Source of the DNA: Phaeosaccion multiseriatum
Taxonomy: Eukaryota > Protista > Ochrophyta, other classes
Assembly (NCBI GenBank): GCA_965112735.1
Contig: OZ218958.1
Span: forward strand, 1,240,001 to 1,304,000
DNA length: 64,000 nucleotides
Direction: 5' to 3'
Of the stretch, positions 38,309 through 64,000 are shown piece after piece. The notes beneath the pieces are model-generated. The model was given only the letters and a program-made list of their open reading frames with translations, was not told the DNA's origin and ran no database searches. The position numbers and the translations under genes were made by a program. How positions within the stretch are numbered: position 1 is the stretch's first letter; each line of letters opens with the position of its first letter.

Positions 38309-40678
38309 ATGGAGCGATCTTCCAGCAGTGTAGCGCCTCCGATCATGGAACGAGGCCTCACCATTGAGATACCTGAACCACCCGACGACAGCAGCAGCTC
38401 GGCGGCGGCTCCGATCATGGAGCAGGGACTTGCGCTTGCAGCGCCTCCGACCTGGGAGGAGGGACTGACTATCGAGGTACAGCATACATGAAGAGGCGAG
38501 AGAGAGAGTAGCAGATCAGGCAGTGGTGGTGCGTGCGTTGGTCTAAAAGAGACGGACGGGCCTCTTCGTGTGCTTGCTTTCTCCCATTATGCTGGCTTGT
38601 CCCTTTCCCCGCTGCTCGCCAAAGTACAATTCCTCTCTCCCTCCCATCTCCCTCCCTCTACCCCCCTCTCCCCTCACCTCCCTCGCGCCCCCTCTCCTCC
38701 TCTCGCTCACTCACCCCCCCCCCTCTCGCAGGCGAAGCGCCTCTGCCAGGCCATACGATATGGGGTGAAGACAGCAAAGATCAAGACCATCATAAGACAG
38801 CTGCTTGCCGAGCGCGGAAGAGCCAGTTTGGAGCAACCCATACACGACGATGGAACCACAGCCATAGTCCTAAGTGCCGAGTATGGTCGCGCAGACGTCG
38901 TGGAGCTTCTACTGGAGGAAGGGGCGTATATCACCACTGGAGGAGGACCGGGGGGAAGGACGCCCTTGGTGGCAGCGAGTCAGCACCAAAAGCTCAGCGT
39001 GGTGAAAGTGTTGTTGAGCGCAGGAGCCCCGGTGGACCAAGTGGACGACGCTTGCATGACGCCCCTGATGTGGTCCGCGCAACTCGGACATGGTACAGTG
39101 GTGGCCATGCTCGTCTCAGCAGGCGCACGCGTAGACAAGCAGAGGCCTGATGGCTTCTCGGCCCTCATTATGGCATCGGACAGTGGGAAAACGTCTGTTG
39201 TGGAGCAGCTCATCAGGGCGAAGGCGAATGTAGATCTGGAGACGAGCAATGGATGCACTGCCCTGGGGCTTGCGGCCGATCAAGGGCGCGTGGCAGTTGT
39301 GTCTGTGCTACTGGCTGCCCAGGCTTCGGTGGATCATACCGATGAGAATGGGGAGACTCCTTTGATGTTTGCCAGTGAGAATGACCACCCCAAAGTGGTC
39401 TCCAAGCTCCTGTCTGCCCAGGCTGACGTGGAGCATACCAATCCGAATGGTGAGAATGCCTTAATGGCGGCTGCGCTAGCGGGCAACGCCGCGGTGGTGA
39501 GGACGCTACTGTCTGCAAACGCCAAAGTGAATCATACACAGGCAAACGGATGCACGGCGCTCATGTTCGCCAGCCACAGCGGACACACTGCTGTAGTGGC
39601 ACGGCTCATCAAGGCAAAGGCATTGGTAGACACAGCGAATGAAAGTGGATCGACCGCCCTCATCACGGCCGCAAAGAATGGGAGTGTGGCAGTGGTGGAG
39701 CTGCTACTCTCTGCCAATGCAAGCGCAGACATGACTAACCACGGCGGGTGGACTGCGCTCATGGCATCTTCGTCTGACGGTCATGTGGGAGTCGTCAAGG
39801 CTCTTCTGCGATCGCGTCGGGGCCTGGACGTAAATCTTGGGATGGAGAATGGAGAGACAGCGCTGTCAATGGCCTGTGAGAATGGGCACGAGGCGTGTGT
39901 GGTGCTGCTCATTCACGCGAAGGCAAACTTGAATGCCACCGACCATCAAGGATGGACACCGCTGATGGTGGCCGCGCAGAGGGGGCACACGAAGGTGGTG
40001 GAGCAGCTCGTCGCCGCGAAAGCAAGCTTGAATGTCGCCGATCACCAAGGATGGACGCCGCTGATGGCGGCCGCGCAGAGGGGGCACACGAAGGTGGTGG
40101 AGCAGCTCGTCGCCGCGAAGGCAAGCTTGGATGAAACAGACAATGTGGGATGGACGGCTCTGAAACTGGCCTGTCAGAACGGGCACGAGGCAGTGGTGGT
40201 GCAGCTGCTCTCTGGCCACGTCAGTCTGGATCATGGGATGGAGGGAGGCATCACCGCTCTGATGTTAGCGTCCCAAAACGGGCACTTGGGAGTTGTGACG
40301 CTGCTACTCTCTGCCCAACTCAGTGACGTGAATATCGAGAGAGACGAGAGGGAGAACGGCGAGGTCCGAGGCACGATTGAGGAGGACGAGTATGAAGTGG
40401 CCAACAATGATACCGGAGATGACGCGTGGGTGAGGAGTGCCTCTCTGGAAACGCAAGCAGGGGTGCGGCAGAAGAGGGGCTGGTCTTGGGGATGGGGCAT
40501 GCGACAGAACATCGGGAGGAGGGAGGAGAATGGACAGAGCCATGGTGTGGGCCCATATCCGCAAACGCAAACTGGACGGCTGCAGAAGCTGTGGCATAGA
40601 TTGCGGGCGCGACAGCGGTGGAGAAGGTCATCTCGGCAAACGCATCCTCGATTCCGACCCAAGTCAAGTGCAGCCTAA
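38309..40678 (+). CDS. Ankyrin-repeat protein (roughly 15 repeats), 2 exons
   Basis: Exon 38309-38476 (GT donor, phase 0) joins exon 38732-40678 (CAG acceptor) in frame. Repeated 33-aa GxTALMxAxxxGHxxVVxxLLxAxAxVD units. Confidence 0.9.
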
Positions 40679-51498: not shown

Positions 51499-52134
51499 AT
51501 GTTGCAAGAAGTTCAAATTTTATTGCGATCTGGATTTTTTTGACCCCCCCCCCGCCCCCCCCCCTTCCCTGCCACACCTGCGGCAGAGGAGAGGAAGGCA
51601 GGAGATAACAGCGTCAGGAAAGAGGACGAAGAAGAAACAAAATGGTACGAAGATGTGGAAAGGAAAGGTTGGGTGAGTCGTGGTGGTGCAACAAGTCAAG
51701 CAAGAATGGAAAATGCGGGGAGACGTCATGAGAAGGAGCCGAGGCCCGCGCATTTGCGATTTCCGGACGGTCTTTTCTGGGCAATTGATAGGAGCTGTCT
51801 GTGCTGACAGCAAGAGCTGTTTCATGACTCCTTGTTATACAAGCAGCCAACGCGCCCTCTTCTCATTCCGTCCCTCTCCTTGTAGCCACTCCCCTGCTTC
51901 CTTCTAGGGGGGAGGCCACCGCGTTCAAGTTGTCCGTGGCCTCTGGCACTGACCTGACCTAGCCACGCTCTCACCACCGTTACTAGTACCATGCATGGCA
52001 AGGCCCTTTCGAGGTCCTGAAGGTTCTTCTCTGTCTGGCGAGTCTACTGACCTTCTTGAATCCCTCTCCCTTTCCCTGCTGTTCCTGCCCCGCCCACTCC
52101 CTTCATCTACCACGTCTCCGGCCCTTTGAACAAT

Positions 52135-55100
52135 ATGAAGCCATCTTGTTGGCGGGGGGGGCTGCCGCTGGCGCTGTTGGCACTCATCGGAGAGCACTTT
52201 CTTCACGTCCGAGGCCAAACAGGTTAGTAGAAGGTTTGCTCGACATGCTCCTTCCTCAACCCAAGTGAGCGAATAGGCAAGTGGACGCTATGACTGTAGT
52301 CGTCGCTTGCCCGAGTTTCCTTCTGGGCTGGTGTTCGTGATTCCTTACCACACCCTCCCCACTTTTGCTTGTCCATCTGGCGCGCAACTAGACTTGAGCA
52401 CTGCGTGTACGGGGTCATACGACTCCAACACGAAGACATGCACGTGCGCCTCTCCTTCTGACCAAGTGACCTGTGCCGGCGATACTTGCCAGGTGCGTGC
52501 ACAGGCCCATACCCCCCTTCTCACTAGCGATCCCTGGGCCCTGCTGACCGCTCCTTGTTGACTCGCTGTGTCCTCCATCCCGACTCTTGACTTGTTGTCT
52601 GCTGATGCATTCTAAGTGCTGGTGCTCAGTGAGTCTTCGCAAACAGCTGTACGTGAGTTAAGTGAAGCCCTCTGACGCCCGTCTCCTTGCCTCTTGCTGG
52701 TGCTACCTCTGCCTTGCCGTTGGCACCTGCTGCGCCTTTCTACACTGTCCGGCCGGGCTCTTCGCTGCTCTTGTTGGGTATCGCGCATGGGGGTCGGACC
52801 ATTTCCTCCACGCGTACCCGCGTGTCTCTTCCTCGCCTCCACAGGGCATCACCTTCATTGTAAGTGCTTGACTTGCATCATCTTTGTTGTGGCAAGCACT
52901 CTCCTTGGCATTTGTTGGGTGTTAGCCTGCCCGAAAAGACCCACCAAAATCCTAACACCCTACTGCTGCCCTTTGCTTGTTGTCTTGCTGTGCTCATCTC
53001 TATCATCGTATGCGGCTGCTGGCTCCCACGCCTTCGACCCATCTCGCTCGCTTCTGCTCACCTGTCATGAAGGATTGCGCCGTGACGTGTGCCGGCTTTG
53101 AAGTCTGCCAAGTGAGTAACGAAGTGTATTGGAGCAGCTGCTGCCCGCTCATCAGTTTGTCCAGCTCCAGCCAGCTCTCTCGCTGCCTGTCCGATTGGAT
53201 TGTGTGTCGTACCCTCCTGTGGCGCAGGTGCAGGGCAGGGCCCACACGTTAAGCCCTCCCCCCCTCTCCTAATGTCCCCCCTGAGCCCCTCTGCTGCCCT
53301 GCCGTATGCCCTCTTTTCACGCCTGTACTCACCACGCTCTCCTACTAAAACCATGCTCTCCCCCCTGCTCCCCTCAAACCATAGGAGGCCACGTTCGAAG
53401 GCGAATCGAGCGCAGCATGCTCTTCGCAGGAATCATGTCGTGTGAGTGTTCAGCCAATCCATAGGCTACCCGCTCTCCCACCCTGGCCGACTCCTTAAGC
53501 CTTGCCGTACTCATGACTGTCGTTGCACGCGTGGCGACGCACACCTCAAGCCTCCCCCCCCCCGCTGACCTCCTCTCTTGGCCCTCTGCTGCTTCCTGCT
53601 CTCTCCTCTCGTCCACACCCACCCTGCTCCCCTCGAACTATAGAGGGCCATGTTCGGAGGCGAATCGAGAGCAGCATGCTCCGGATTTAACTCATGTGTT
53701 GTGAGTGATCAGCTGACCAATATCCGCTCCTGCTGGCTGCCTGGCCGGCTCCTTAAGCCTTGCCTTGCTTACTCTGACCTTCCGCTGCACGCATGACGGC
53801 GCACGCCTCGAGCCTTCACCCTCTGCTGACCTTTCCTCTGTGCCCTTCTGCTGTGGTTCCTGCTCTGTTCTCTCGTCCACACCCCACCCTGCTCTCCCCT
53901 CGAACTATAGAGGGCCACGTTCGAAGGCGAATCGAGCGCAGTATGCTCTGGAGATATACTATCATGTCAGGTCTGTACGCAGTCACAGCCCAAGTCCGCG
54001 GTGCACGGCTGAGCGAATGTGTGTCTTACTCCTCTTACCGGACCGCTGCACGGCCCATTTCTCTCACTCTGCTTGGCTCCTCGGCTGACCTCCCTCCCCC
54101 CTGTGCCTCTCTTCTTGGCTTCCTGCTCTCTCAATTCAAAACACAGCTTGCCGCGTTTAAGGGAAAGTCTGTCGCTATGTGCAACGTGGACAGAAGCTGC
54201 CTTAATATCCAGGTGTGTGTGTCTGACGAGCGGCCAGCAAAGGCACTGGGACTGGGCCAGCCCATGCAAGGGGACGGTAGAGGAGACAGTGCGTGTACAT
54301 ACTGTGATGTACCACGTGGTGAGATGACGAATGACAACCCGCACCTCTCTCGCACGCTCTCTCACTGTGACCAACAGACACCAGATGGTGTTGACGATGA
54401 TGGTACACCATACACGTCATGCTGCACTGGCGACTTTTGGTGAGTGGTAATGGATGGCAAAGCGCACTTGAGGGGTGCATTTTCTCCCCGGCCCAGCCAA
54501 GGCGTTGAGGAGCTCTACGCAGGGCATTTCGCTTTTGCTCCGCCGCACACAATCCCACTTCTTCCTCCCCCCCCTTACCCCTGTCTTTGTGCGTTGATAC
54601 TCTCGCGAGGCCGTACGGTTGTGAACTTCCCTTTCACGGTGAACACCGCCCATGCGACTTATCTTCAAAACCGATAGCCCCACCACGGACGGGGTAGAGG
54701 TCAGAGTATGTGAAGGTAAGAGCGAATTGAAGTGAACCTCGTCGCTCCCACACTTTGCTGCTTTTCAAGTAGCGCTCGGATTCTTTACTCGTTACCGTCC
54801 ACTCTTTGGCCTCCAGTCTGACAGAAATATTTCTCTCGTACGCTTGTCTTGCGTGTACCACTCGGTCGGTCGCCCCCCGCCCTCCTGCCATTGCGTGCGC
54901 TTCGTGCGGCGGTGAAGGCCCTCCTGATGCAGACACGGACGGGGACGGCGTTTTTGACAATCTCGACAAGTGAGTGCTTCCAGTCCTATGCATGTTGGAC
55001 CGTCGCGTGCGTGTGGATGTGCTGCATGGCCTGGGTGTGGCCTGCCCCGCAGCAGCGCCATGTCTCTTTGGCCTGCATCAGTCCCTGCTTGTTATGTTCG

Positions 55101-58100
55101 CCTCCGTCGTGCGTGAGTGCTTGCGTATGCACCCCACGGGCGCGCTTCTCTCTGTCTGGTGTTAAGTTTTGGCGTACCTGGTCAATCCCCCCACTGCTTC
55201 ACTTCAAAGAATTCCTGATTGCCGTGTCACTTTTCGGTATTAGTAGGAGACCGGGCCATGCTCACATACTCCTTCCCTCTCCACCCTCTCCACGCTTTCC
55301 TGGGCACAGCTGCCCTGAGCAAAGTAACACTGGCCAGGAGGATGCCGATAATGACGGAGTAGGAGACGCCTGCGACATGTAAGGAGTCGGGCTTTATAAA
55401 AGTGTGTGTATGGCATGTGCGTAATTTTCCGGGTTTACTCTTTCTTGTCACTGGTGTTGGCTGAATGCCTCCCACTGCTCCACTTGAAATGCAAGTGCTG
55501 GACCGCTGCTGATTGCCGTATCACTGCGTTGGTATTAGTAGGAGACCGACCGGCCCATGCTCACAGACTTGTGTCCTTGCCCCATCCCTACCCCCCCATT
55601 CCTCCCTCTCCACGCTTTTCTCGGCACAGCTGCCCTCAGATAGCCAACCCCCTGCAGATTGAAGTTGAAGGGTGGGACGCGTGTTCAGGTGAGAGAGGGG
55701 CTGACCTGTGATTACGCGGCTGGAAGGGAAACTTGCAAGGAGGGGTAGGCCACCTCCGGAGGCGCTTTGCCATTTGCTGAGCTCGGCCTTGCGGGTGGGC
55801 AAGCTAAGCTTCTCCACCTCGTTGCGTGTGACACTCCGTGGTCTGATGATACTCTTTGCTGCTCTGCTGAGTTTCCTTCTGGGCTGGTGTTCGTGATTCC
55901 TCACCACGCACCCTCCCCACTTTTGCGTGTCCATCTGGCGCGCAACTAGACTTGAGCACTGCGTGTACGGGGTCATACGACGCCAGCACGAAGACATGCA
56001 CGTGCGCCTCTCCTTCTGACCAAGTGACCTGTGCCGGCGATACTTGCCAGGTGCGTGTGCAGGCCGATGTCCCCCGACTTCTCTCCAGCGATCCGTGGGC
56101 CCTGCAGACCACCTCCTTGTTGACGCGCTGCGTCCTCCATCCCGACTCTTGACTTGTTGTCTGCTGATGCGTTCTAACTGCTGGTGCTCAGTGAGTCTTC
56201 GCAAACAGCTGTACGTGAGTTAAGTGAAGCCCTCTGACGCCCGTCTCCTTGCCTCTTGCTGGTGCTACCTCTGCCTTGCCGTTGGCACATGCTGCGCCTT
56301 TCTACACTGTCCGGCCGGGCTCTTTGCTGCTCTTGTTGGGTATCGCGCATGGGGGTCGGACCATGTCCTCCACGCGTACCCGCGTGTCTCTTCCTCGCCT
56401 CCACAGGGCATCACCTTCATTGTAAGTGCTTGAATTGCATCATCTTTGTTGTGGCAAGCACTCTCCTTGGCATTTGTTGGGTGTTAGCCTGCCCGAAAAG
56501 ACCCAGCCACCAAAATCCTAACACCCTACTGCTGCCCTTTGTTTGTTGTCTTGCTGTGCTCATCTCTATCATCGTATGCGGCTGCTGGCTCCCACGCCTT
56601 CGACCCATCTCGCTCGCTTCTGCTCACCTGTCATGAAGGGTTGCGCCGTGAATTGTCCCAACGACTACTTCTGCAGAGTGAGTAGGAAAGTGCCTTGGAG
56701 CAGCTGCTGCCCGCTCATCAGTCGGTCCAGCTCCAGCCAGCTCTCTCGCTGCCTGTCCGATTGGATTGTGTTTCGTAGCCTCCTGTGGCGCAGGTGCAGG
56801 GCAGGGCCCACACGTTAAGCCATCGCCCCCTCTCCTAATGTCCCCCCTGAGCCCCTCTGCTGCCCTGCCGTATGCCCTCTTTTCACGCCTGGACTCACCA
56901 CGCTCTCCTACTAAAATCATGCTCTCCCCCCCCCTGCTCCTCTCAAACCACAGGACGTCACGTTCGAAGGCAAATCGAGCGCAGCATGCTCTGCAGCTAA
57001 CTCATGTCGTGTGAGTGATCAGCTGACCAATATCCGCTCCTGCTGCCTGGCCGGCTCCTTAAGCCTTGCCTTGCTTACTCTGACCTTCCGCTGCACGCAT
57101 GACGGCGCACACCTCGAGCCTTCACCCTCTGCTGACCTCTTCTCTGTGCCCTTCTGCTGTGGTTCCTGCTCTGTTCTCTCGTCCACACCCCACCCTGCTC
57201 TCCCCTCAAACCACAGGACGCTACGTTCAAAGGCGAATCGACCACAGCATGCTCTGCAGCTAACTCATGTCGTGTGAGTGATCAGCTGACCAATATCCGC
57301 TCCTGCTGCCTGGCCGGCTCCTTAAGCCTTGCCTTGCTCACTTGTGACTTTCCGCTGCCCGCGTGGCGACGCACACCTCAAGCCCCCCCCCCCCCCGCTG
57401 ACTTCCTCTCTTGGTCCTCTACTGCTTCCTGCTCTCTTCTCTCGTCCACACCCACCCTGCTCCCCTCGAACCATAGGCCACGTTTGAAAGCAAATCGAGC
57501 GCAGCATGCTATGGGTCTTTCTCATGCGAGGCGAGTGTTCAGCCAATTCATACCCGCTCTCCTACCCTGGCCGGTTTCTTGAGCGAGTCTTGCCGTACTC
57601 GTGACTTCCGTTGCACGCGTGACGACGCACACCTCAAGCCTACTCCCCCCCCGCTGACCTCCTCTCTTGGCCCTCTACTGCTTCCTGCTCTCTTCTCTCG
57701 TCCATACCCCCCCTGCTCCCCTCAAACCACAGGAGGCCACGTTCGAAGGCGAATCGAGAGCAGCATGCTCCGGATTTAACTCATGTCTTGTGAGTGATCA
57801 GCTGACCACTATCCGCTCCTGCTGCCTGGCCGGCTCCTTAAGCCTTGCCTTGCTTACTCGTGACCTTCCGCTGCACGCATGACGGCGCACGCCTCGAGCC
57901 TTCACCCTCTGCTGACCTCTTCTCTGTGCCCTGCTGTTGTGGTTCCTGCTCTGTTCTCTCGTCCACACCCCACCCTGCTCCCCTCGAACTATAGTATGCC
58001 ACGTTCGAAGGCGAATCGAGCGCAGTATGCTCTGGAGATATATCATGTCAGGTCTGTACGCAGTCACAGCCCAAGTCCGCGGTGCACGGCTGAGCGAATG

Positions 58101-59714
58101 TGTGTCTTACTCCTCTTACCGGACCGCTGCACGGCCCATTTCTCTCACTCTGCTTGGCTCCTCGGCTGACCTCGCTCCCCCCTGTGCCTCTCTTCTTGGC
58201 TTCCTGCTCTCTCAATTCAAAACCAGCTTGCCGCGTTTAAGGAAAAGTCTGTCGCTACGTGCAACGTGGACAGAAGCTGCCTTAATATCCAGGTGTGTGT
58301 GTCTGACGAGCGGCCAGCAAAGGCACTGGGACTGGGCCAGCCCATGCAAGGGGACGGTAGAGGAGACAGTGCGTGTACATACTGTGATGTACCACGTGGT
58401 GAGATGACGAATGACAACCCGCACCTCTCTCGCACGCTCTCTCACTGTGGCCAACAGACACCAGATGCTGTTGACGATGATGGTACACCATACACGTCAT
58501 GCTGCACTGGCGACTTTTGGTGAGTGGTAATGGCAGGCAAAGCGCACTTGGGGGGTGCATTTTCTCCCCGGCCCAGCCAAGGCGTTGAGGAGCTCTACGC
58601 AGGGCATTTCGCTTTTGCTCCGCCGCACACAATCCCACTTCTTCCTCCCCCCCCTTACCCCTGTCTTTGTGCGTTGATACTCCCGCGATGCCGTACGGTT
58701 GTGAACTTCCCTTTCACGGTGAACACCGCCCATGCGACTTATCTTCAAAACCGATAGCCCCACCACGGACCTTAACGGGGTAGAGGTCAGAGTATGTGAA
58801 GGTAAGAGCGAATTGAAGTGTAGGAAGGACCTCGTCGCTCCCACACTTTGCTGCTTTTCAAGTAGCGCTCGGATTCTTCACTCGTTACCGTCCACTCTTT
58901 GGCCTCCAGTCTGACAGAAATATTTCTCTCGTACGCTTGTCTTGCGTGTACCACTCGGTCGGTCCCCACCCCCTCCTGCCGTGGCGTGCGCTTCGTGCGG
59001 CGGTGACGGCCCTCCTGATGCAGACAACGACAATGACGGCGTTGCTGACCGTTTCGACAAGTGAGTGATTTCATACCCATGCATGTTGGACCGTCGTGTG
59101 CGTGTGGATGTGTTGCGTGGCCTGGGTGTGGCCTGCCCCCCAGCAGCGCATCTCTCTCTCAATGGCCTGCATCAGTCCCTGCTTGTTGCTTTTGCCCTTG
59201 TCGTGCATGTGCGCGTATGCACCCCAAGGGCGCGCTTCTCTCTGTCTCTGGTGTTTGGTTTTGGCGGGGCTAGTCAATCTCCTCACTGCTTCACTTGAAG
59301 TACAGGTGCTGGACCGCTCGCTGATTGCCGTGTCACCTTGAGGAGACTGGCTGGGCCATGCTCACAGACTTGTGTCCTTGCCTTATCCCTACCCCTTCAT
59401 CCCTTACTCTCCACGCTTTACTCTGCACAGCTGCCCTCAGATAGCCAACCCCTCCAGGAGGATGTCGATGACGACGGAGTAGGAGACGGCTGTGACAAGT
59501 AAGAAGTCAGGCTTTACAAAGAGTGTGTATGACATGTGTGTACTTCCCCCTGGGTTTACTCTGTCTGGTCATTTGTGTTGTTGGCTCAAAACCCCCCCAC
59601 TACTTCACTTCAAATGAAAGCCCTGCATCGTTCGCTTATCGCCGTGTCACTTTGTTGGCATTGGGAGACCGGGCCATGCTCACAGACGTGGGAGGGCACC
59701 TGCCTGTGTGTGTG

Positions 59715-59760
<46 letters not shown>

Positions 59761-62700
59761 TGTAAGCTGCGTGCGTGCCCCCTTCCATGCGCTGCCTCTC
59801 TTTGTACGGCAGCCTGCGGTAGCCTGTGCTTGTCGAGGTTGCCTGTTTATGCAGGCGTGCGATTTGGCTCCCTCCTGTGTGCAGCCAAGTGGCACCTCAG
59901 GCGTGTACCTTCCTTCCTTCTGCGGAGGAGGCCCCCCTCACCACACATGTGCTCCCTTCTCTTCTCTCCGGCTTCCTTGCAGCTGTCCCTCTGTGCCCAA
60001 CGCGGATCAAACTGACTTGAACGGCTGTGAAGGTGAGGAAAGGGGGGGGGCAGGGAAGGAGGGGGTGCAGACCGAAAGAGCAACAAGCAAGCCGGAGGGG
60101 AGGAGGGTTGGGGGAGACGCGAAACAGGGGGTGCTTCCAATAGAACATGCGAGTCCTTTTGGTGATCTGGACCTATGGCATGACTGTGGGGCAAAGGTGT
60201 GTTTCTTGCTCGGTCCTGGTCCATCCACTTGTAGCTCGCTGGCACATTGACTCCACACCCTCCCTGTTCCTATGCTTGTGGCCTCTCTTTTTTGTGTTCT
60301 GCTCTCTCTTACTGCTTGTCGCCCATTCGGCGCGCCGCCAGCATTGAGCTCTGCGTGCACGGAGTCATACGTTGTTTCAACCACGGACGAAGGTTCGACA
60401 AGAACGTGCACGTGCGCCTCTACTTCTGACCAAGTGACCTGTGCCGGCGATACTTGCAAGGTGCGTGTGCAGGCCGATGTCCCCCGACTTCTCACCAGCG
60501 ATGGATGGGCCCTGCAGACCACCTCCTTGTTGACTCGCTGCGTCCTCCATCCCGGCTCTTGACTTGTTGTCTGCTGATGCATTCTAAGTGCTGGTGCTCA
60601 GTGAGTCTTCGCAAACAGCTGTACGTGAGTTAAGTGAAGCCCTCTGACGCCCGTCTTCTTGCCTCTTGCTGGTGCTACCTCTGCCTTGCCGTTGGCACCT
60701 GCTGCGCCTTTCTACACTGTCCGGCCGGGCTCTTCGCTGCTCTTGTTGGGTATCGCGCATGGGGGTCGGACCATTTCCTCCACGCGTACCCGCGTGTCTC
60801 TTCCTCGCCTCCACAGGGCATCACCTTCATTGTAAGTGCTTGAATTGCATCATCTTTGTTGTGGCAAGCACTCTCCTTGGCATTTGTTGGGTGTTAACCT
60901 GCTCGTACAGACCCACCAAAATCCTAACACCCTACTGCTGGCCTTTGCTTGTTTTCGTGCTGTGCTCGTATCTGCCATCGCGTGCGGCTGCTGGCTTCCA
61001 CGCCTTCAACCCACCTCGCTCGGTTCTGCTCACCTGTCATGAAGAGTTGCGCCGTGGAGTGCGCCGACCCACAAGTCTGCAGAGTGAGTAGGGGAGTGCC
61101 TTGGAGCAGCTGCTGCCCGCTCATCAGTCGGTCCAGCTCCCACTCTCTCGCCGCCTGTCCGGTGGGATTTTGTGTCACACCCTCCTGTGGCACAGGTGCA
61201 GGGCAGGGTCCACGCGTTAAGCCCTCCCCCCTCCCTCCTGATGTCCCCCCTGTGCCCCTCTGCTGTTCTGTCTCCTGCCCTCTTTTCACGCCTGTACTCG
61301 CCCTGCTCTCCTACGGACCTACGGAAACCATAGGGTGCCAAGTTTGGTGGCACCTCAACTGCCACCTGCTCTGCCAGGCGATCTTGTGTGGTGAGTGACC
61401 ATCATCCCAAGTCGCCTCTCGCTACCTGGGCGTTCCCACACGTTTGGCAGCCAGGCCTTCCCCCCTTCTCCTGACCCTTCCCTTGGCTGTGCCCGTCTGC
61501 TGCCCTGCCCCGTGTTTTCTTCCTCTCGTTGATACCCACCCTGTTGCACACAGTTGGCCAAGTTCGAAAGCGATTCCAGGGCTGTCTGCTCCAGGCCGTA
61601 CTCATGTCAGGTGAGGTCTCACCTGGCCCAAGTCCGATCGGCCTCTGTGCCTAGCCACTCTGTGTCTTTCTCTTGTTGATCGCTACGCGACTCACACCGC
61701 ACGACCCCTAAGTCCTGCCTCACTCCTGACCTCCCACCTGTGCTCCTCTGCTGACCTCCTCCCCTCTTCTCTCTGTACCACCCCTCGAACCAGAATACCG
61801 AGTTTTTCGGCACTTCGATCGCAGACTGCTCCGAGACGAATTCCTGTCGCGTGAGTCTCAAGTCCGCTCACGTTGCCTGGCTGATGCTGTCGCTTGCTCC
61901 TGTCGCACCGCCGCCGAACGGCCGATACCTCAAGCCTTGCTCCTCTCCTGAACTTCCCTCCGTGCCCCCCGGCCTCCTTCTTTGTGTCGTCGACACCCGT
62001 CCTGCTCCACACAGGGTGCTGATCTATTTGACGCTTCCACCGCCACTTGCGACATTTTTGATAGCTGCGAGCTGCTCAAGGTGCGTTTGGCGGACAAGAG
62101 ACCAGCGAAGGCACAGGACCAGCTTATGCAAGGGGAAGTAGAGGAGACACGCTTGTCCCCTTCGGTGATGTGATAGCTAAGATGTACACTTGGGGATGTG
62201 GTGACTTACCATCCGCACCTCGCTCTCTCGCACGCTCTCTCACTGTGGCCAACAGACACCAGCTGCTGACGGGGATGGTACACCATACACGTCATGCTGC
62301 ACTGGCGACTTTTGGTGAGTGGTAATGGCAAGCAAAGCGCACTTGGGGGGTGCATTTTCTCCCCGGCCCAGCCAAGGCGTTGAGGAGCTCTACGCAGGGC
62401 AATTCGCTTTTGCTCCGCCGCACACAATCCCACTCCTTCCTCCCCGCCCCTTGCCCCTCTCTTTGTGCGTTGATACTCCCGTGTTGCCGTACGGTTGTGA
62501 ACTCCCCTTTCACGGTGAACACCGGCCATGCAACCATCTTCAAAACCGATAGCCCCCCCACCACCAACGGGGTGGAAGTCAGAGTATGTGAAGGTAAGAG
62601 CGAATTGAAGTGAACCTCGTCGCTCCCACACTCTGCTGCTTTTCAAGTAGCGCTCGGATTCTTTACTCGTTACCGTCCACTCTTTGGCCTCCAGTCTGAC

Positions 62701-63767
62701 AGAAATATTTCTCTCGTACGCTTGTCTTGCGTGTACCACTCGGTCGGTCCCCACCCCCTCCTGCCGTGGCGTGCGCTTCGTGCGGCGGTGACGGCCCTCC
62801 TGATGCAGACACGGACGGGGACGGCGTTGTTGACCATCTCGACAAGTGAGTGCTTCCAGTCCTATGCATGTTGGACCGTCGTGTGCGTGTGGATGTGCTG
62901 CGTGGCCTGGGTGTGGCCTGCCCCCCAGCAGCGCATCTCTCTCTCAATGGCCTGCATCAGTCCCTGCTTGTTGCTTTTGTCCTTGTCGTGCATGTGTGCG
63001 TATGCACCCTGTGTGTGTGTGTGTGTGTGCGTGTGTGTGTGTGTGTTTGTGCGTGTGTGTGCGTGTGTGTATGTGTGTCTGCGTGTGCGTGTGTGTGCGT
63101 GTGTGTATGTGTGTGTGAGAAGTCAGGTTTCACAGCTGTGTATGTCCGCCCCCCCGTGTTTTTCTCTGTCTTGTCACTGGTGTTGGCTGAATGCCTCCCA
63201 CTGCTCCACTTGAAATGCAAGTGCTGGACCGTTCGCTGATTGCCGTGTCACCTTGTCGGTATTAGTAGGAGACCGGGTCATGCTCACAGACTTGTGTCCT
63301 TCCCGCTTCCCTTCCCCTTCATCCCTCCCTCTTCACGCTTTGCTGCACAGCTGCCCTCAGATAGCCAACCCCCTGCAGATTGAAGTTGAAGGGGGGGACG
63401 CGTGTCAAGGTGAGAGAGGGGCTGACCTGTGATTACGCGGCTGGAAGGGAAACTTGCAAGGAGGGGTAGGCCACCTCCGGAGGCGCTTTGCCATTTGCTG
63501 AGCTCGGCCCTGCGGGTGGGCAAGCTAAGCTTCTCCACCTTATTGCGTGTGACACTCCGTGGTCTGATCATGATACTCTTTGCTGCTCTGCTGGTCGGCG
63601 GCGCGATGTGCTTCTCACCCCCATAACTTGCCATCATGGTCATGCCGCTGGGTCGTGTGCTGCCTTCTCATTCAGACACCGACGGAGACGGGATTGTGGA
63701 CACGGAGGACAAGTGAGTGGACGTGGGAGGGCACCTGTATATAGATGTATATGAGTATGTGTGTGTA

Positions 63768-63810
<43 letters not shown>

Positions 63811-64000
63811 GTGTGTATGTGTGTGTATTGGTGTGTGTGTGTATGTGTGTCTGCGTGTGCGTGTGTGTGTATGTGTGTATGCGTGTTTGAGAAGTCAGGT
63901 TTCACAGCTGTGTATGTCCGCCCCTCCGTGTTTTTCTCTGTGTTGTCACTGGTGTTGGCTGAATGCCTCCCACTGCTCCACTTGAAATGCAAGTGCTGGA
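52135..64000 (+). CDS. Secreted Cys-rich modular repeat protein with thrombospondin type-3 repeats, encoded by about 40 micro-exons; runs off the window
   Basis: Signal exon 52135-52222 ([29 protein letters not shown]). Module 1 exons 52392-52492, [52647-52652], 52845-52859, 53073-53111, 53385-53441, 53644-53700, 53911-53970, 54147-54212, 54378-54439, 54678-54715, 54933-54969, 55310-55378, 55630-55688 splice in one frame, including [35 protein letters not shown] (TSP type-3 consensus). Modules 2 and 3 start at 55950 and 60342. Last exon seen is 63676-63712. One apparent frameshift at about 59450. Confidence 0.85.
52310..63600 (+). repeat. Three tandem segmental duplications (about 3.6, 4.4 and 3.3 kb) with nested ~260-bp sub-repeats
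   Basis: Near-identical blocks, e.g. 52560-53070 / 56120-56635 / 60530-61040 and 54350-55030 / 58430-59130 / 62230-62910. Exon-plus-intron units of about 260 bp repeat at 53340-53970 and 56900-58050. Confidence 0.95.

What the first reader, a model, noticed from the sequence alone, without database searches (positions are those of the whole stretch)
53073..61083. Exons diverge while flanking introns stay nearly identical between modules
The paralogous 39-nt exon reads [13 protein letters not shown] (53073-53111), [13 protein letters not shown] (56639-56677) and [13 protein letters not shown] (61045-61083). Only C-A-V-x-C...C is kept, yet the roughly 500 bp upstream and the TTGGAGCAGCTGCTGCCCGCTCATCAGT intron downstream are almost identical. 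The same pattern holds for the TSP3 exon ([12 protein letters not shown] / [12 protein letters not shown] / [12 protein letters not shown]). This is the reverse of the normal exon/intron conservation pattern. It suggests diversifying selection on exposed residues and/or intron homogenisation by gene conversion (inference).
Basis: partly seen in the sequence, partly recalled or inferred. Interest (0 to 1): 0.8.

Follow-up and report, generated by a model that had tools for sequence, protein, structure and literature searches.

The report
Fast-evolving exons between near-identical introns
In an alga's gene for a secreted, cysteine-rich repeat protein built of tandem modules, a few tiny exons differ several-fold more between modules than the introns around them, most likely through selection for protein diversity plus gene conversion, as already known from venom and parasite surface genes.

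Summary
The three 39-nt exons read as stated. They differ at 12-14 of 39 bases, against 3-6% in the ~530 nt upstream and 5-13% downstream (Fisher p 2e-9 to 6e-5). The 28-nt intron motif is identical in all seven modules of the locus. The TSP3-like exon shows the pattern only in pairs that include module B.

Other exons behave normally. The 15-nt microexon is invariant. In nine 750-bp sub-repeats the exons show 0 of 3456 pairwise differences while their introns differ by 5.9%.

Across exons, synonymous divergence equals intron divergence, and nonsynonymous divergence exceeds both (pairwise ML omega 5.8, 3.2, 2.7; p 0.002-0.04). Paralogues on three other contigs repeat the pattern.

A Sawyer-type test shows gene conversion (P=0.0002). 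A 300-bp intron core is homogenised locally but is not slower in the distant paralogues, so this is homogenisation rather than constraint. No donor copies of the variable segments exist in the genome.

The exons are predicted only, because no RNA data exist. An earlier follow-up in this scan reported the same pattern about 14 kb downstream in the same gene. This is a new member of a known kind (venom-gene accelerated evolution, ASSET).

The parts
52135..52222 (+). Predicted first coding exon: ATG plus a hydrophobic signal-peptide-like stretch. It ends one base into a codon, which the next exon completes.
   Evidence: Read from the alignment of the 5' ends of the two tandem genes. The phase fits exon E1. 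The signal peptide was judged by eye only.
52313..55869 (+). Module A (type 1). It has 12 predicted exons totalling 660 nt, which is 220 codons, and the reading frame closes over the module.
   Evidence: Self-comparison. Exon coordinates and GT-AG sites.
55869..59750 (+). Module B (type 1). It carries two extra 260-bp repeat units.
59751..64000 (+). Module C (type 2). It runs to about 64505, beyond the window. Modules D, E and F follow, and then a second tandem gene that starts with module G.
53073..53111 (+). 39-nt hypervariable exon, copy A.
56639..56677 (+). 39-nt hypervariable exon, copy B.
   Evidence: Its variable 27 nt occur only here in the genome.
61045..61083 (+). 39-nt hypervariable exon, copy C. 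Copies D and E are identical to it, and copy F differs by one base.
52845..52859 (+). 15-nt microexon, invariant in all 7 modules (other copies at 56407-56421 and 60817-60831). Together with the 39-nt exon it encodes one repeat unit.
   Evidence: AG/GT and the 15-nt length are kept in 5 paralogues on other contigs, where the sequence differs.
52629..52935 (+). Locally homogenised intron core around the microexon. The equivalents are about 56191-56501 in B and 60601-60907 in C.
   Evidence: 1-3% divergence against 6-14% in other intron sequence. Not slower in the distant paralogues. Unitig depth is about 6-7 times the single-copy depth.
53129..53156 (+). 28-nt intron motif downstream of the 39-nt exon, identical in all 7 modules (also at 56695 and 61101).
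53385..53970 (+). Three 57-60-nt exons of module A (53385-53441, 53644-53700, 53911-53970). Each encodes one 19-20-residue cysteine repeat and is variable. Module B has five such exons between 56954 and 58051, and module C has three between 61334 and 61850.
54933..54969 (+). 37-nt exon encoding a D-x-D-x-D-G calcium-site-like motif, copy A (B copy at 59024-59060, C copy at 62809-62845). It is variable at the non-aspartate positions and mosaic between modules.
55310..55378 (+). 69-nt exon with the clearest thrombospondin type 3 signature.
   Evidence: Pfam TSP_3, E=8.7e-4, 19.4 bits, below the 25-bit cut-off.
63351..63712 (+). One of nine 750-bp sub-repeats, holding exons 63351-63409 and 63676-63712. 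These exons are identical in all copies and serve as the internal control.
   Evidence: 0/3456 pairwise exon differences against 1232/20768 (5.9%) in the introns.

Best explanation
The stretch is the 5' part of a long gene of a photosynthetic protist. The gene encodes a secreted protein made of 19-residue cysteine-stapled repeats and thrombospondin-type-3-like calcium-site repeats. Roughly one repeat is encoded per very short exon, and the exons are arranged in 3.5-7 kb tandem modules.

The modules are young duplicates. They keep exchanging sequence by gene conversion or unequal crossing-over, so their introns differ by only about 2-12%. A 300-bp core around the 15-nt microexon has been homogenised to 1-3%.

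On this background, the codons for the variable face and for the loop between the two cysteines of each repeat accumulate amino-acid changes faster than synonymous or intronic sites change. So do the non-ligand positions of the aspartate-rich repeats. This is diversifying (positive) selection on a fixed scaffold.

Shown here: the exon-specific excess, omega above 1, the mosaic tracts, the local homogenisation, and the lack of donor copies. Inferred: that the variable residues are exposed, that the protein is secreted, and that the agent of selection is some recognition partner (a pathogen, a grazer, a mate or the cell's own kind).
For: Exon-specific excess:
- 39-nt exon 31-36% against flanks 3-13%.
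- Scan peak on that exon reached by none of 2000 permutations.
- A-G head: exons 16.4% against introns 5.7%, p=4e-9. C-F: 8.8% against 3.7%, p=1.5e-6.

Selection:
- pN exceeds intron divergence (p 1e-2 to 1e-6), while pS does not differ from intron divergence (p 0.15-0.66).
- ML omega 5.8, 3.2 and 2.7 with LRT p 0.0016, 0.012 and 0.036.
- The same excess of pN over intron divergence appears in nine of the ten pairs of five paralogues on contigs C5, C7 and C14 (the tenth is borderline, p=0.09).
- Variation is confined to alternate positions and the inter-cysteine loop.

Internal control:
- Nine sub-repeats have identical exons but 5.9% intron divergence. Exons of this gene are therefore not generally mutable, and its introns are not generally frozen.

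Conversion:
- Sawyer SSCF P=0.0002 for both the head and the tail alignment.
- Four-gamete configuration inside the 37-nt exon.
- Intron core 2-3% against 11-14% between module types.

Exon model:
- Every projected exon keeps AG and GT or GC.
- 17 of 17 exon indels are multiples of three, against 25 of 98 in introns.
- The reading frame closes over each module.
Against: - No RNA evidence exists, so every exon is a prediction.
- The pairwise tests share sequences and are not independent, and there are few synonymous sites (28-126 per comparison).
- Five of the eight changed codons in the A-B 39-nt exon differ at two or three bases. Multi-nucleotide events or short segment replacement would inflate omega without selection.
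- Between module types, synonymous divergence (about 0.2) exceeds intron divergence (about 0.085). Part of the contrast may therefore come from homogenised introns rather than from fast exons.
- C-F omega of 1.9 is not significant.
- There are no population data.
Confidence: 0.68

Rival explanations
1. Segment switching without selection. A mutational process (multi-nucleotide events, error-prone repair or very short templated patches) rewrites 15-20 nt in these exons. The excess of replacement changes would then be a by-product.
For: The loop of the 39-nt exon is almost unrelated between A and B: about 10 of 15 bases differ, and codons differ at 2-3 bases, while the flanks differ by 1-5%. The picture is the same as that described as ASSET in snake toxin genes (PMC2474615, PMC2711939).
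Against: - No donor within 3 mismatches anywhere in the genome for the A or the B segment.
- Only 14 exons of this type exist in the genome.
- Changes avoid the scaffold codons and keep the frame and the length, which requires selection at least as a filter.
- Other exons of the same gene are invariant.
Confidence: 0.14
2. The introns are unusually conserved because they carry splicing signals needed to recognise 15-60-nt exons. On this view the exons evolve at an ordinary rate.
For: - Introns can be aligned even with paralogues on other contigs, and several 15-30-nt blocks are identical.
- The splice zones are 3-5 times less diverged than the intron interiors.
- A predicted hairpin upstream of the microexon keeps its stems, while its loop differs in length by about 10 nt.
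Against: - Between the two paralogue groups the introns differ by 26-41% and carry many indels, so they are not under strong constraint.
- Intron divergence equals synonymous divergence within module types.
- The near-identical core is not slower than other intron sequence in the distant paralogues.
- RNAalifold finds almost no covariation: a term of -2.0 kcal/mol, and 4 of 68 pairs with changes on both sides.
- No Rfam family matches.
Confidence: 0.1
3. Artefact: a wrong exon model, misassembly of a repeat array, or chance.
For: There is no transcript evidence. The array is repetitive. One exon (59431-59498) carries a 1-nt frameshift that could be a homopolymer error.
Against: - Short-read unitigs of four runs match module-specific stretches without any difference, and their depth over the shared core fits about 7 copies. 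They come from a single sample, which may be the one the assembly was made from.
- Splice sites, the three-fold periodicity of exon indels and frame closure all support the exons.
- Permutation and Fisher tests exclude chance.
Confidence: 0.04

Closest known systems
[quoted passage not shown]
   Same: - Tandem or multigene family of secreted, disulfide-scaffolded proteins.
- Introns highly similar between copies.
- Short exon segments radically different while the cysteines and the fold-forming residues are kept.
- Replacement changes exceed silent ones.
   Different: - This is an alga, not an animal venom gland.
- The copies compared are modules inside one gene (and its tandem twin), not separate small genes.
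- Each variable segment sits in its own 39-60-nt exon.
- No function or target is known.
Schistosome micro-exon genes (MEGs) (PMC4350168; bioRxiv 10.1101/2023.06.21.545858)
   Same: - Secreted proteins encoded mostly by very short exons that can be removed without breaking the frame.
- High dN/dS in the mature part.
- Tandem duplication.
   Different: - No sequence relationship was tested or is expected.
- MEG variation is produced by alternative splicing, which cannot be examined here.
- Here only some exons (15, 39, 57, 60 and 66 nt) are individually symmetric. The others close the frame only as a module.
Intron homogenisation beside diversified exons, as described for MHC class I loci (from my own knowledge: Cereb, Hughes and Yang 1997; not fetched here)
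   Same: Recombination or conversion homogenises the introns, while selection keeps the neighbouring exons diverse.
   Different: That case concerns alleles in a population under balancing selection. Here the copies are paralogous modules in one haploid assembly, and no polymorphism data exist.
Thrombospondin type 3 calcium-binding repeats (Pfam PF02412)
   Same: Aspartate-rich D-x-D-x-D-G-x-x-D motifs, with a C-P ... C-D frame in the 69-nt exon.
   Different: Only one exon gives a Pfam match, and it is below the cut-off. The repeats are split one per exon and interleaved with an unnamed 19-residue cysteine repeat.

Membership tests
Thrombospondin type 3 repeat (PF02412) | Profile match at or above Pfam's gathering score | tested here: not met
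Exon 55311-55376 scores 19.4 bits, E=8.7e-4, against a 25-bit cut-off. A six-frame search of the whole genome found nothing at E<=0.001, but that search also found nothing in its control genomes.
Thrombospondin type 3 repeat (PF02412) | Aspartate-rich calcium-site motif D-x-D-x-D-G-x-x-D with flanking cysteines | tested here: met
   Read directly in the translations of the 37-nt and 69-nt exons of every module.
Gene family under accelerated (diversifying) evolution, venom-toxin type | Exons more diverged than the introns between recent paralogues | tested here: met
   Met for the 39-nt, 57-nt and 37-nt exons. Not met for the microexon, the E13-type exons and E9/E10.
Gene family under accelerated (diversifying) evolution, venom-toxin type | Nonsynonymous rate above the synonymous rate | tested here: met
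   NG86 omega 1.4-2.8. Pairwise ML omega 2.7-5.8 with LRT p 0.0016-0.036 in three of four comparisons. Models allowing multi-nucleotide changes were not available.
Gene family under accelerated (diversifying) evolution, venom-toxin type | Conserved cysteine scaffold and a secreted product | tested here: inconclusive
   The cysteines and the alternate scaffold residues are invariant in 16 repeat exons. A signal-peptide-like first exon was read by eye only, and there are no protein data.
Micro-exon gene architecture (MEG-like) | Most of the coding sequence in very short, phase-symmetric exons | tested here: inconclusive
   Exons are 15-119 nt. The 15, 39, 57, 60 and 66-nt exons start and end between codons. 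The others close the frame only in combination.
Micro-exon gene architecture (MEG-like) | Protein variants made by alternative splicing of the micro-exons | not testable with these tools
   No RNA run holds the stretch, and the four runs laid on it are DNA unitigs without any joints.
Concerted evolution by gene conversion | Mosaic identical tracts between otherwise diverged copies, beyond what permutation gives | tested here: met
   Sawyer SSCF P=0.0002 in the head and tail alignments. Between-type tracts run 20-210 bp. The intron core is homogenised in this locus only.
Cassette or donor-templated diversification (silent donor copies) | Donor copies of the variable segments elsewhere in the genome | tested here: not met
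   The 27-nt variable segments of copies A and B occur once each at up to 3 mismatches. There are 14 exons of this type in the whole genome.

The most novel reading that the evidence does not exclude
The loop-coding 15-20 nt of these exons are rewritten by a dedicated or at least targeted process: exon-limited segment replacement or local hypermutation that needs no genomic donor. This would give a photosynthetic protist a germ-line diversification system for a secreted repeat protein. Its micro-exon layout would then exist so that each variable loop can be changed, gained or skipped on its own.
Probability: 0.07. Interest if true: 0.8.

Novelty: new member of a known kind. Interest (0 to 1): 0.45.

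Why it matters
Signatures of diversifying selection point to molecules that face a changing partner. In algae very few such molecules are known. This locus offers a secreted scaffold with defined hypervariable loops, a built-in neutral reference (its own introns) and built-in conserved controls (the invariant sub-repeat exons). It is therefore a clean system for asking what drives recognition-type evolution in a free-living phototroph. It also lets one ask how gene conversion and selection divide the work inside one gene. The layout of one repeat per exon is relevant to how repeat proteins grow by exon duplication.

Tried and rejected
- RNA evidence. The run search found no RNA holder. The four runs are DNA unitigs of one sample, with no spliced joints and no usable allelic signal. 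Most of their 'other letters' are paralogous copies.
- Intron constraint as the main cause. I favoured this after seeing intron blocks conserved in paralogues on other contigs. I dropped it because those introns differ by 26-41% between groups, and the near-identical core is not slower there.
- Conserved intron RNA. Rfam gave nothing apart from a chance-level miRNA hit. RNAalifold gave little covariation.
- Coding on either strand of the intron. Long ORFs exist, as expected at 58% GC, but intron indels are mostly not multiples of three.
- Donor cassettes. None found.
- The 6-nt microexon proposed in another note. Its acceptor AG is absent in the distant paralogues, so it is not supported.
- My first acceptor for the 37-nt exon (AG at 54916-54917) was wrong. 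It exists only in module A. The conserved acceptor lies 15 nt downstream.
- A-B comparison of the 69-nt exons. I set it aside because the two are different subtypes, both of which are present in the second gene.
Exons were searched singly by reference. This leaves the 19-residue repeat without a family name and the protein without a structure model.
Full report
WHAT IS THERE

The window is part of contig C9 of a 67-Mb, 22-contig eukaryotic genome. The genome carries at least 54 matches to the light-harvesting chlorophyll-binding family, so the organism is photosynthetic.

From about 52000 to about 97000 in window coordinates lies an array of related modules. I fetched the 38 kb beyond the window.
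- Type-1 modules: A (52313-55869), B (55869-59750) and G (about 92265-97000).
- Type-2 modules: C (59751-64505), D, E and F.

The sequence upstream of A aligns with the sequence upstream of G. It contains an ATG followed by a hydrophobic, signal-peptide-like stretch (52135-52222), whose phase fits the next exon. A and G therefore open two tandem paralogous genes, and B to F are internal modules of the first gene.

EXON MODEL

No RNA run holds the stretch. The four runs that do hold it are DNA unitigs of one sample and show no spliced joints. The exons are therefore predictions, but three lines of evidence support them.
- Module A can be read as 12 exons with canonical sites, totalling 660 nt, and the frame closes over the module.
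- Every exon projected onto the other modules keeps AG and GT. Two use GC donors.
- All 17 indel events inside predicted exons are multiples of three, against 25 of 98 in introns.

Most exons encode one repeat each. There are two repeat kinds.
- A 19-residue unit with the pattern x-A-x-F-x-G-x-S-x-A-x-C-S-x-x-x-S-C-x.
- Aspartate-rich units of thrombospondin type 3 style.

One 69-nt exon gives a sub-threshold Pfam TSP_3 match. The 15-nt microexon plus the 39-nt exon of the finding together make one unit of the first kind.

THE OBSERVATION

- They differ at 14, 12 and 12 of 39 bases.
- The ~530 nt upstream differ by 3.4-5.9%, and the 224 nt downstream by 5-13%.
- Fisher p runs from 1.8e-9 to 6.3e-5.
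- A scan that ignores annotation places a significant peak on the exon in the A-B alignment.
- The 28-nt intron motif is identical in all seven modules.

For the 37-nt aspartate-rich exon the claim holds for A-B (10/37) and B-C (8/37), but not for A-C (2/37).

The pattern is not a property of exons in general.
- The microexon is invariant in the seven modules.
- C and D differ by 1.3% in exons and 2.2% in introns.
- The nine 750-bp sub-repeats have 0 of 3456 pairwise exon differences against 5.9% in their introns.
- Whole-module contrasts range from none (A-B tail, A-G tail, C-D) to threefold (A-G head 16.4% against 5.7%, p=4e-9; C-F 8.8% against 3.7%, p=1.5e-6).

SELECTION

Pooled Nei-Gojobori counts show that synonymous divergence is statistically the same as intron divergence, while nonsynonymous divergence exceeds both. 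For A-B the values are pS 0.045, pN 0.120 and introns 0.079.

A pairwise codon-model likelihood that I wrote gives the following:

| Pair | omega | LRT p |
|---|---|---|
| A-B | 5.8 | 0.0016 |
| A-G | 3.2 | 0.012 |
| B-G | 2.7 | 0.036 |
| C-F | 1.9 | 0.13 |

Further points:
- In 16 repeat exons the even positions and the two cysteines are invariant. Position 1, the three loop residues and the last position each take 6-9 different residues.
- The same excess appears in five paralogues on contigs C5, C7 and C14. There pN is 0.10-0.24, against intron divergence of 0.06-0.10.

Caveats: the pairs overlap, silent sites are few, and many changed codons differ at two or three bases. Such codons can inflate omega.

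GENE CONVERSION VERSUS INTRON CONSTRAINT

A Sawyer-type permutation test on the polymorphic sites is significant in both the head and the tail alignments (P=0.0002). Tracts of 20-210 bp are shared between module types. The 37-nt exon shows all four combinations of two variable sites among A, B, F and G.

A 300-bp intron core around the microexon (52629-52935) differs by 2-3% between module types whose other introns differ by 11-14%. Within type 1 it differs by about 1-2%, against about 6%.

I first suspected constraint, because intron blocks are conserved in the paralogues on other contigs. Three results argue against it.
- In those paralogues the core is no slower than the rest, and between the groups the introns differ by 26-41% with many indels.
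- No Rfam family matches.
- RNAalifold finds almost no covariation.

The near-identity of the core is therefore local homogenisation. Between module types, silent divergence (about 0.2) exceeds intron divergence (about 0.085). This fits introns that are partly younger than the exons they flank.

NO DONORS

The variable 27 nt of copies A and B occur once each in the genome at up to three mismatches. Only 14 exons of this type exist. A cassette-style templated system is not supported.

COMPARISON WITH WHAT IS KNOWN

The picture matches the accelerated evolution of venom gene families, in which introns are similar and short exon segments are switched (ASSET; PMC2474615, PMC2711939, PMC6062510). 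In layout it recalls the schistosome micro-exon genes with high dN/dS (PMC4350168). The division of labour between intron homogenisation and exon diversity recalls MHC class I loci; this last comparison rests on my own knowledge.

An earlier follow-up in this scan reported the same pattern for four repeat exons of module F, about 14 kb past the window. My C-F figures for those exons are 26 of 237 against 3.7% in introns. They agree in direction and give a smaller ratio than that report's.

VERDICT

This is a real, exon-specific reversal of the usual pattern. The best explanation is diversifying selection on a fixed scaffold, inside a module array that undergoes gene conversion. It is a new member of a known kind.

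As a result the 19-residue repeat remains unnamed, and surface exposure remains an inference.

Noticed in passing
L002:5146-5186 (79146-79186 in extended window coordinates, module F): The module F copy of the 41-nt exon carries an in-frame TAA. This is either the stop codon of the first gene or a dead exon. Homology to the next module type continues for about 600 bp after it.
   Followed up: partly
window 59431-59498: The module B copy of the 69-nt TSP3-like exon is 68 nt long. It lacks one base in a C-run, which shifts the frame into a stop. Skipping this exon would keep the frame. It could also be a homopolymer assembly error.
   Followed up: partly
window 57531-57532 and L003:9721-9722: Two repeat exons (57477-57530, and 93664-93720 in extended coordinates) are followed by GC instead of GT, so these are probably GC-AG introns.
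   Followed up: no
window 52770-52830 (and the same place in every module and paralogue): A predicted hairpin of about 15 bp lies 30-70 nt upstream of the 15-nt microexon. Its stems are invariant in 8 sequences. Its loop is about 10 nt longer in the paralogues on other contigs. There are no compensatory changes, so this is neither support nor refutation.
   Followed up: partly
window 52613-52618: The 6-nt candidate microexon noted by another reader has AG and GT here. Its acceptor AG is missing in the five paralogues on other contigs.
   Followed up: partly
G000 C5 (about 220 kb, 507 kb, 1.14 Mb, 1.157 Mb), C7 (about 1.533 and 1.537 Mb), C14 (about 0.743 Mb): Seven further genes or modules of the same family. 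Their introns can be aligned with those of this locus, and their exons likewise change faster than their introns.
   Followed up: partly
window 51570-52134 versus L003 (about 91740-92400 in extended coordinates): The putative promoter and 5' leader of the two tandem genes are about 93-95% identical over 560 bp, apart from two insertions in the second gene.
   Followed up: no
window 63010-63115: A long imperfect (TG)n tract sits in the intron at the junction between the module body and the 750-bp sub-repeats. Similar tracts lie at other sub-repeat junctions.
   Followed up: no
window 39916-40206: A 99-bp tandem repeat of 2.9 copies, which looks like 33-residue ankyrin-type repeats of a neighbouring gene.
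   Followed up: no
G000 C9:474910-521083 and C15:1683723-1700707: Tandem arrays of apparently intron-less light-harvesting protein genes, 11 and 5 copies, at a spacing of 4.5 kb and 3.5-7 kb respectively.
   Followed up: no
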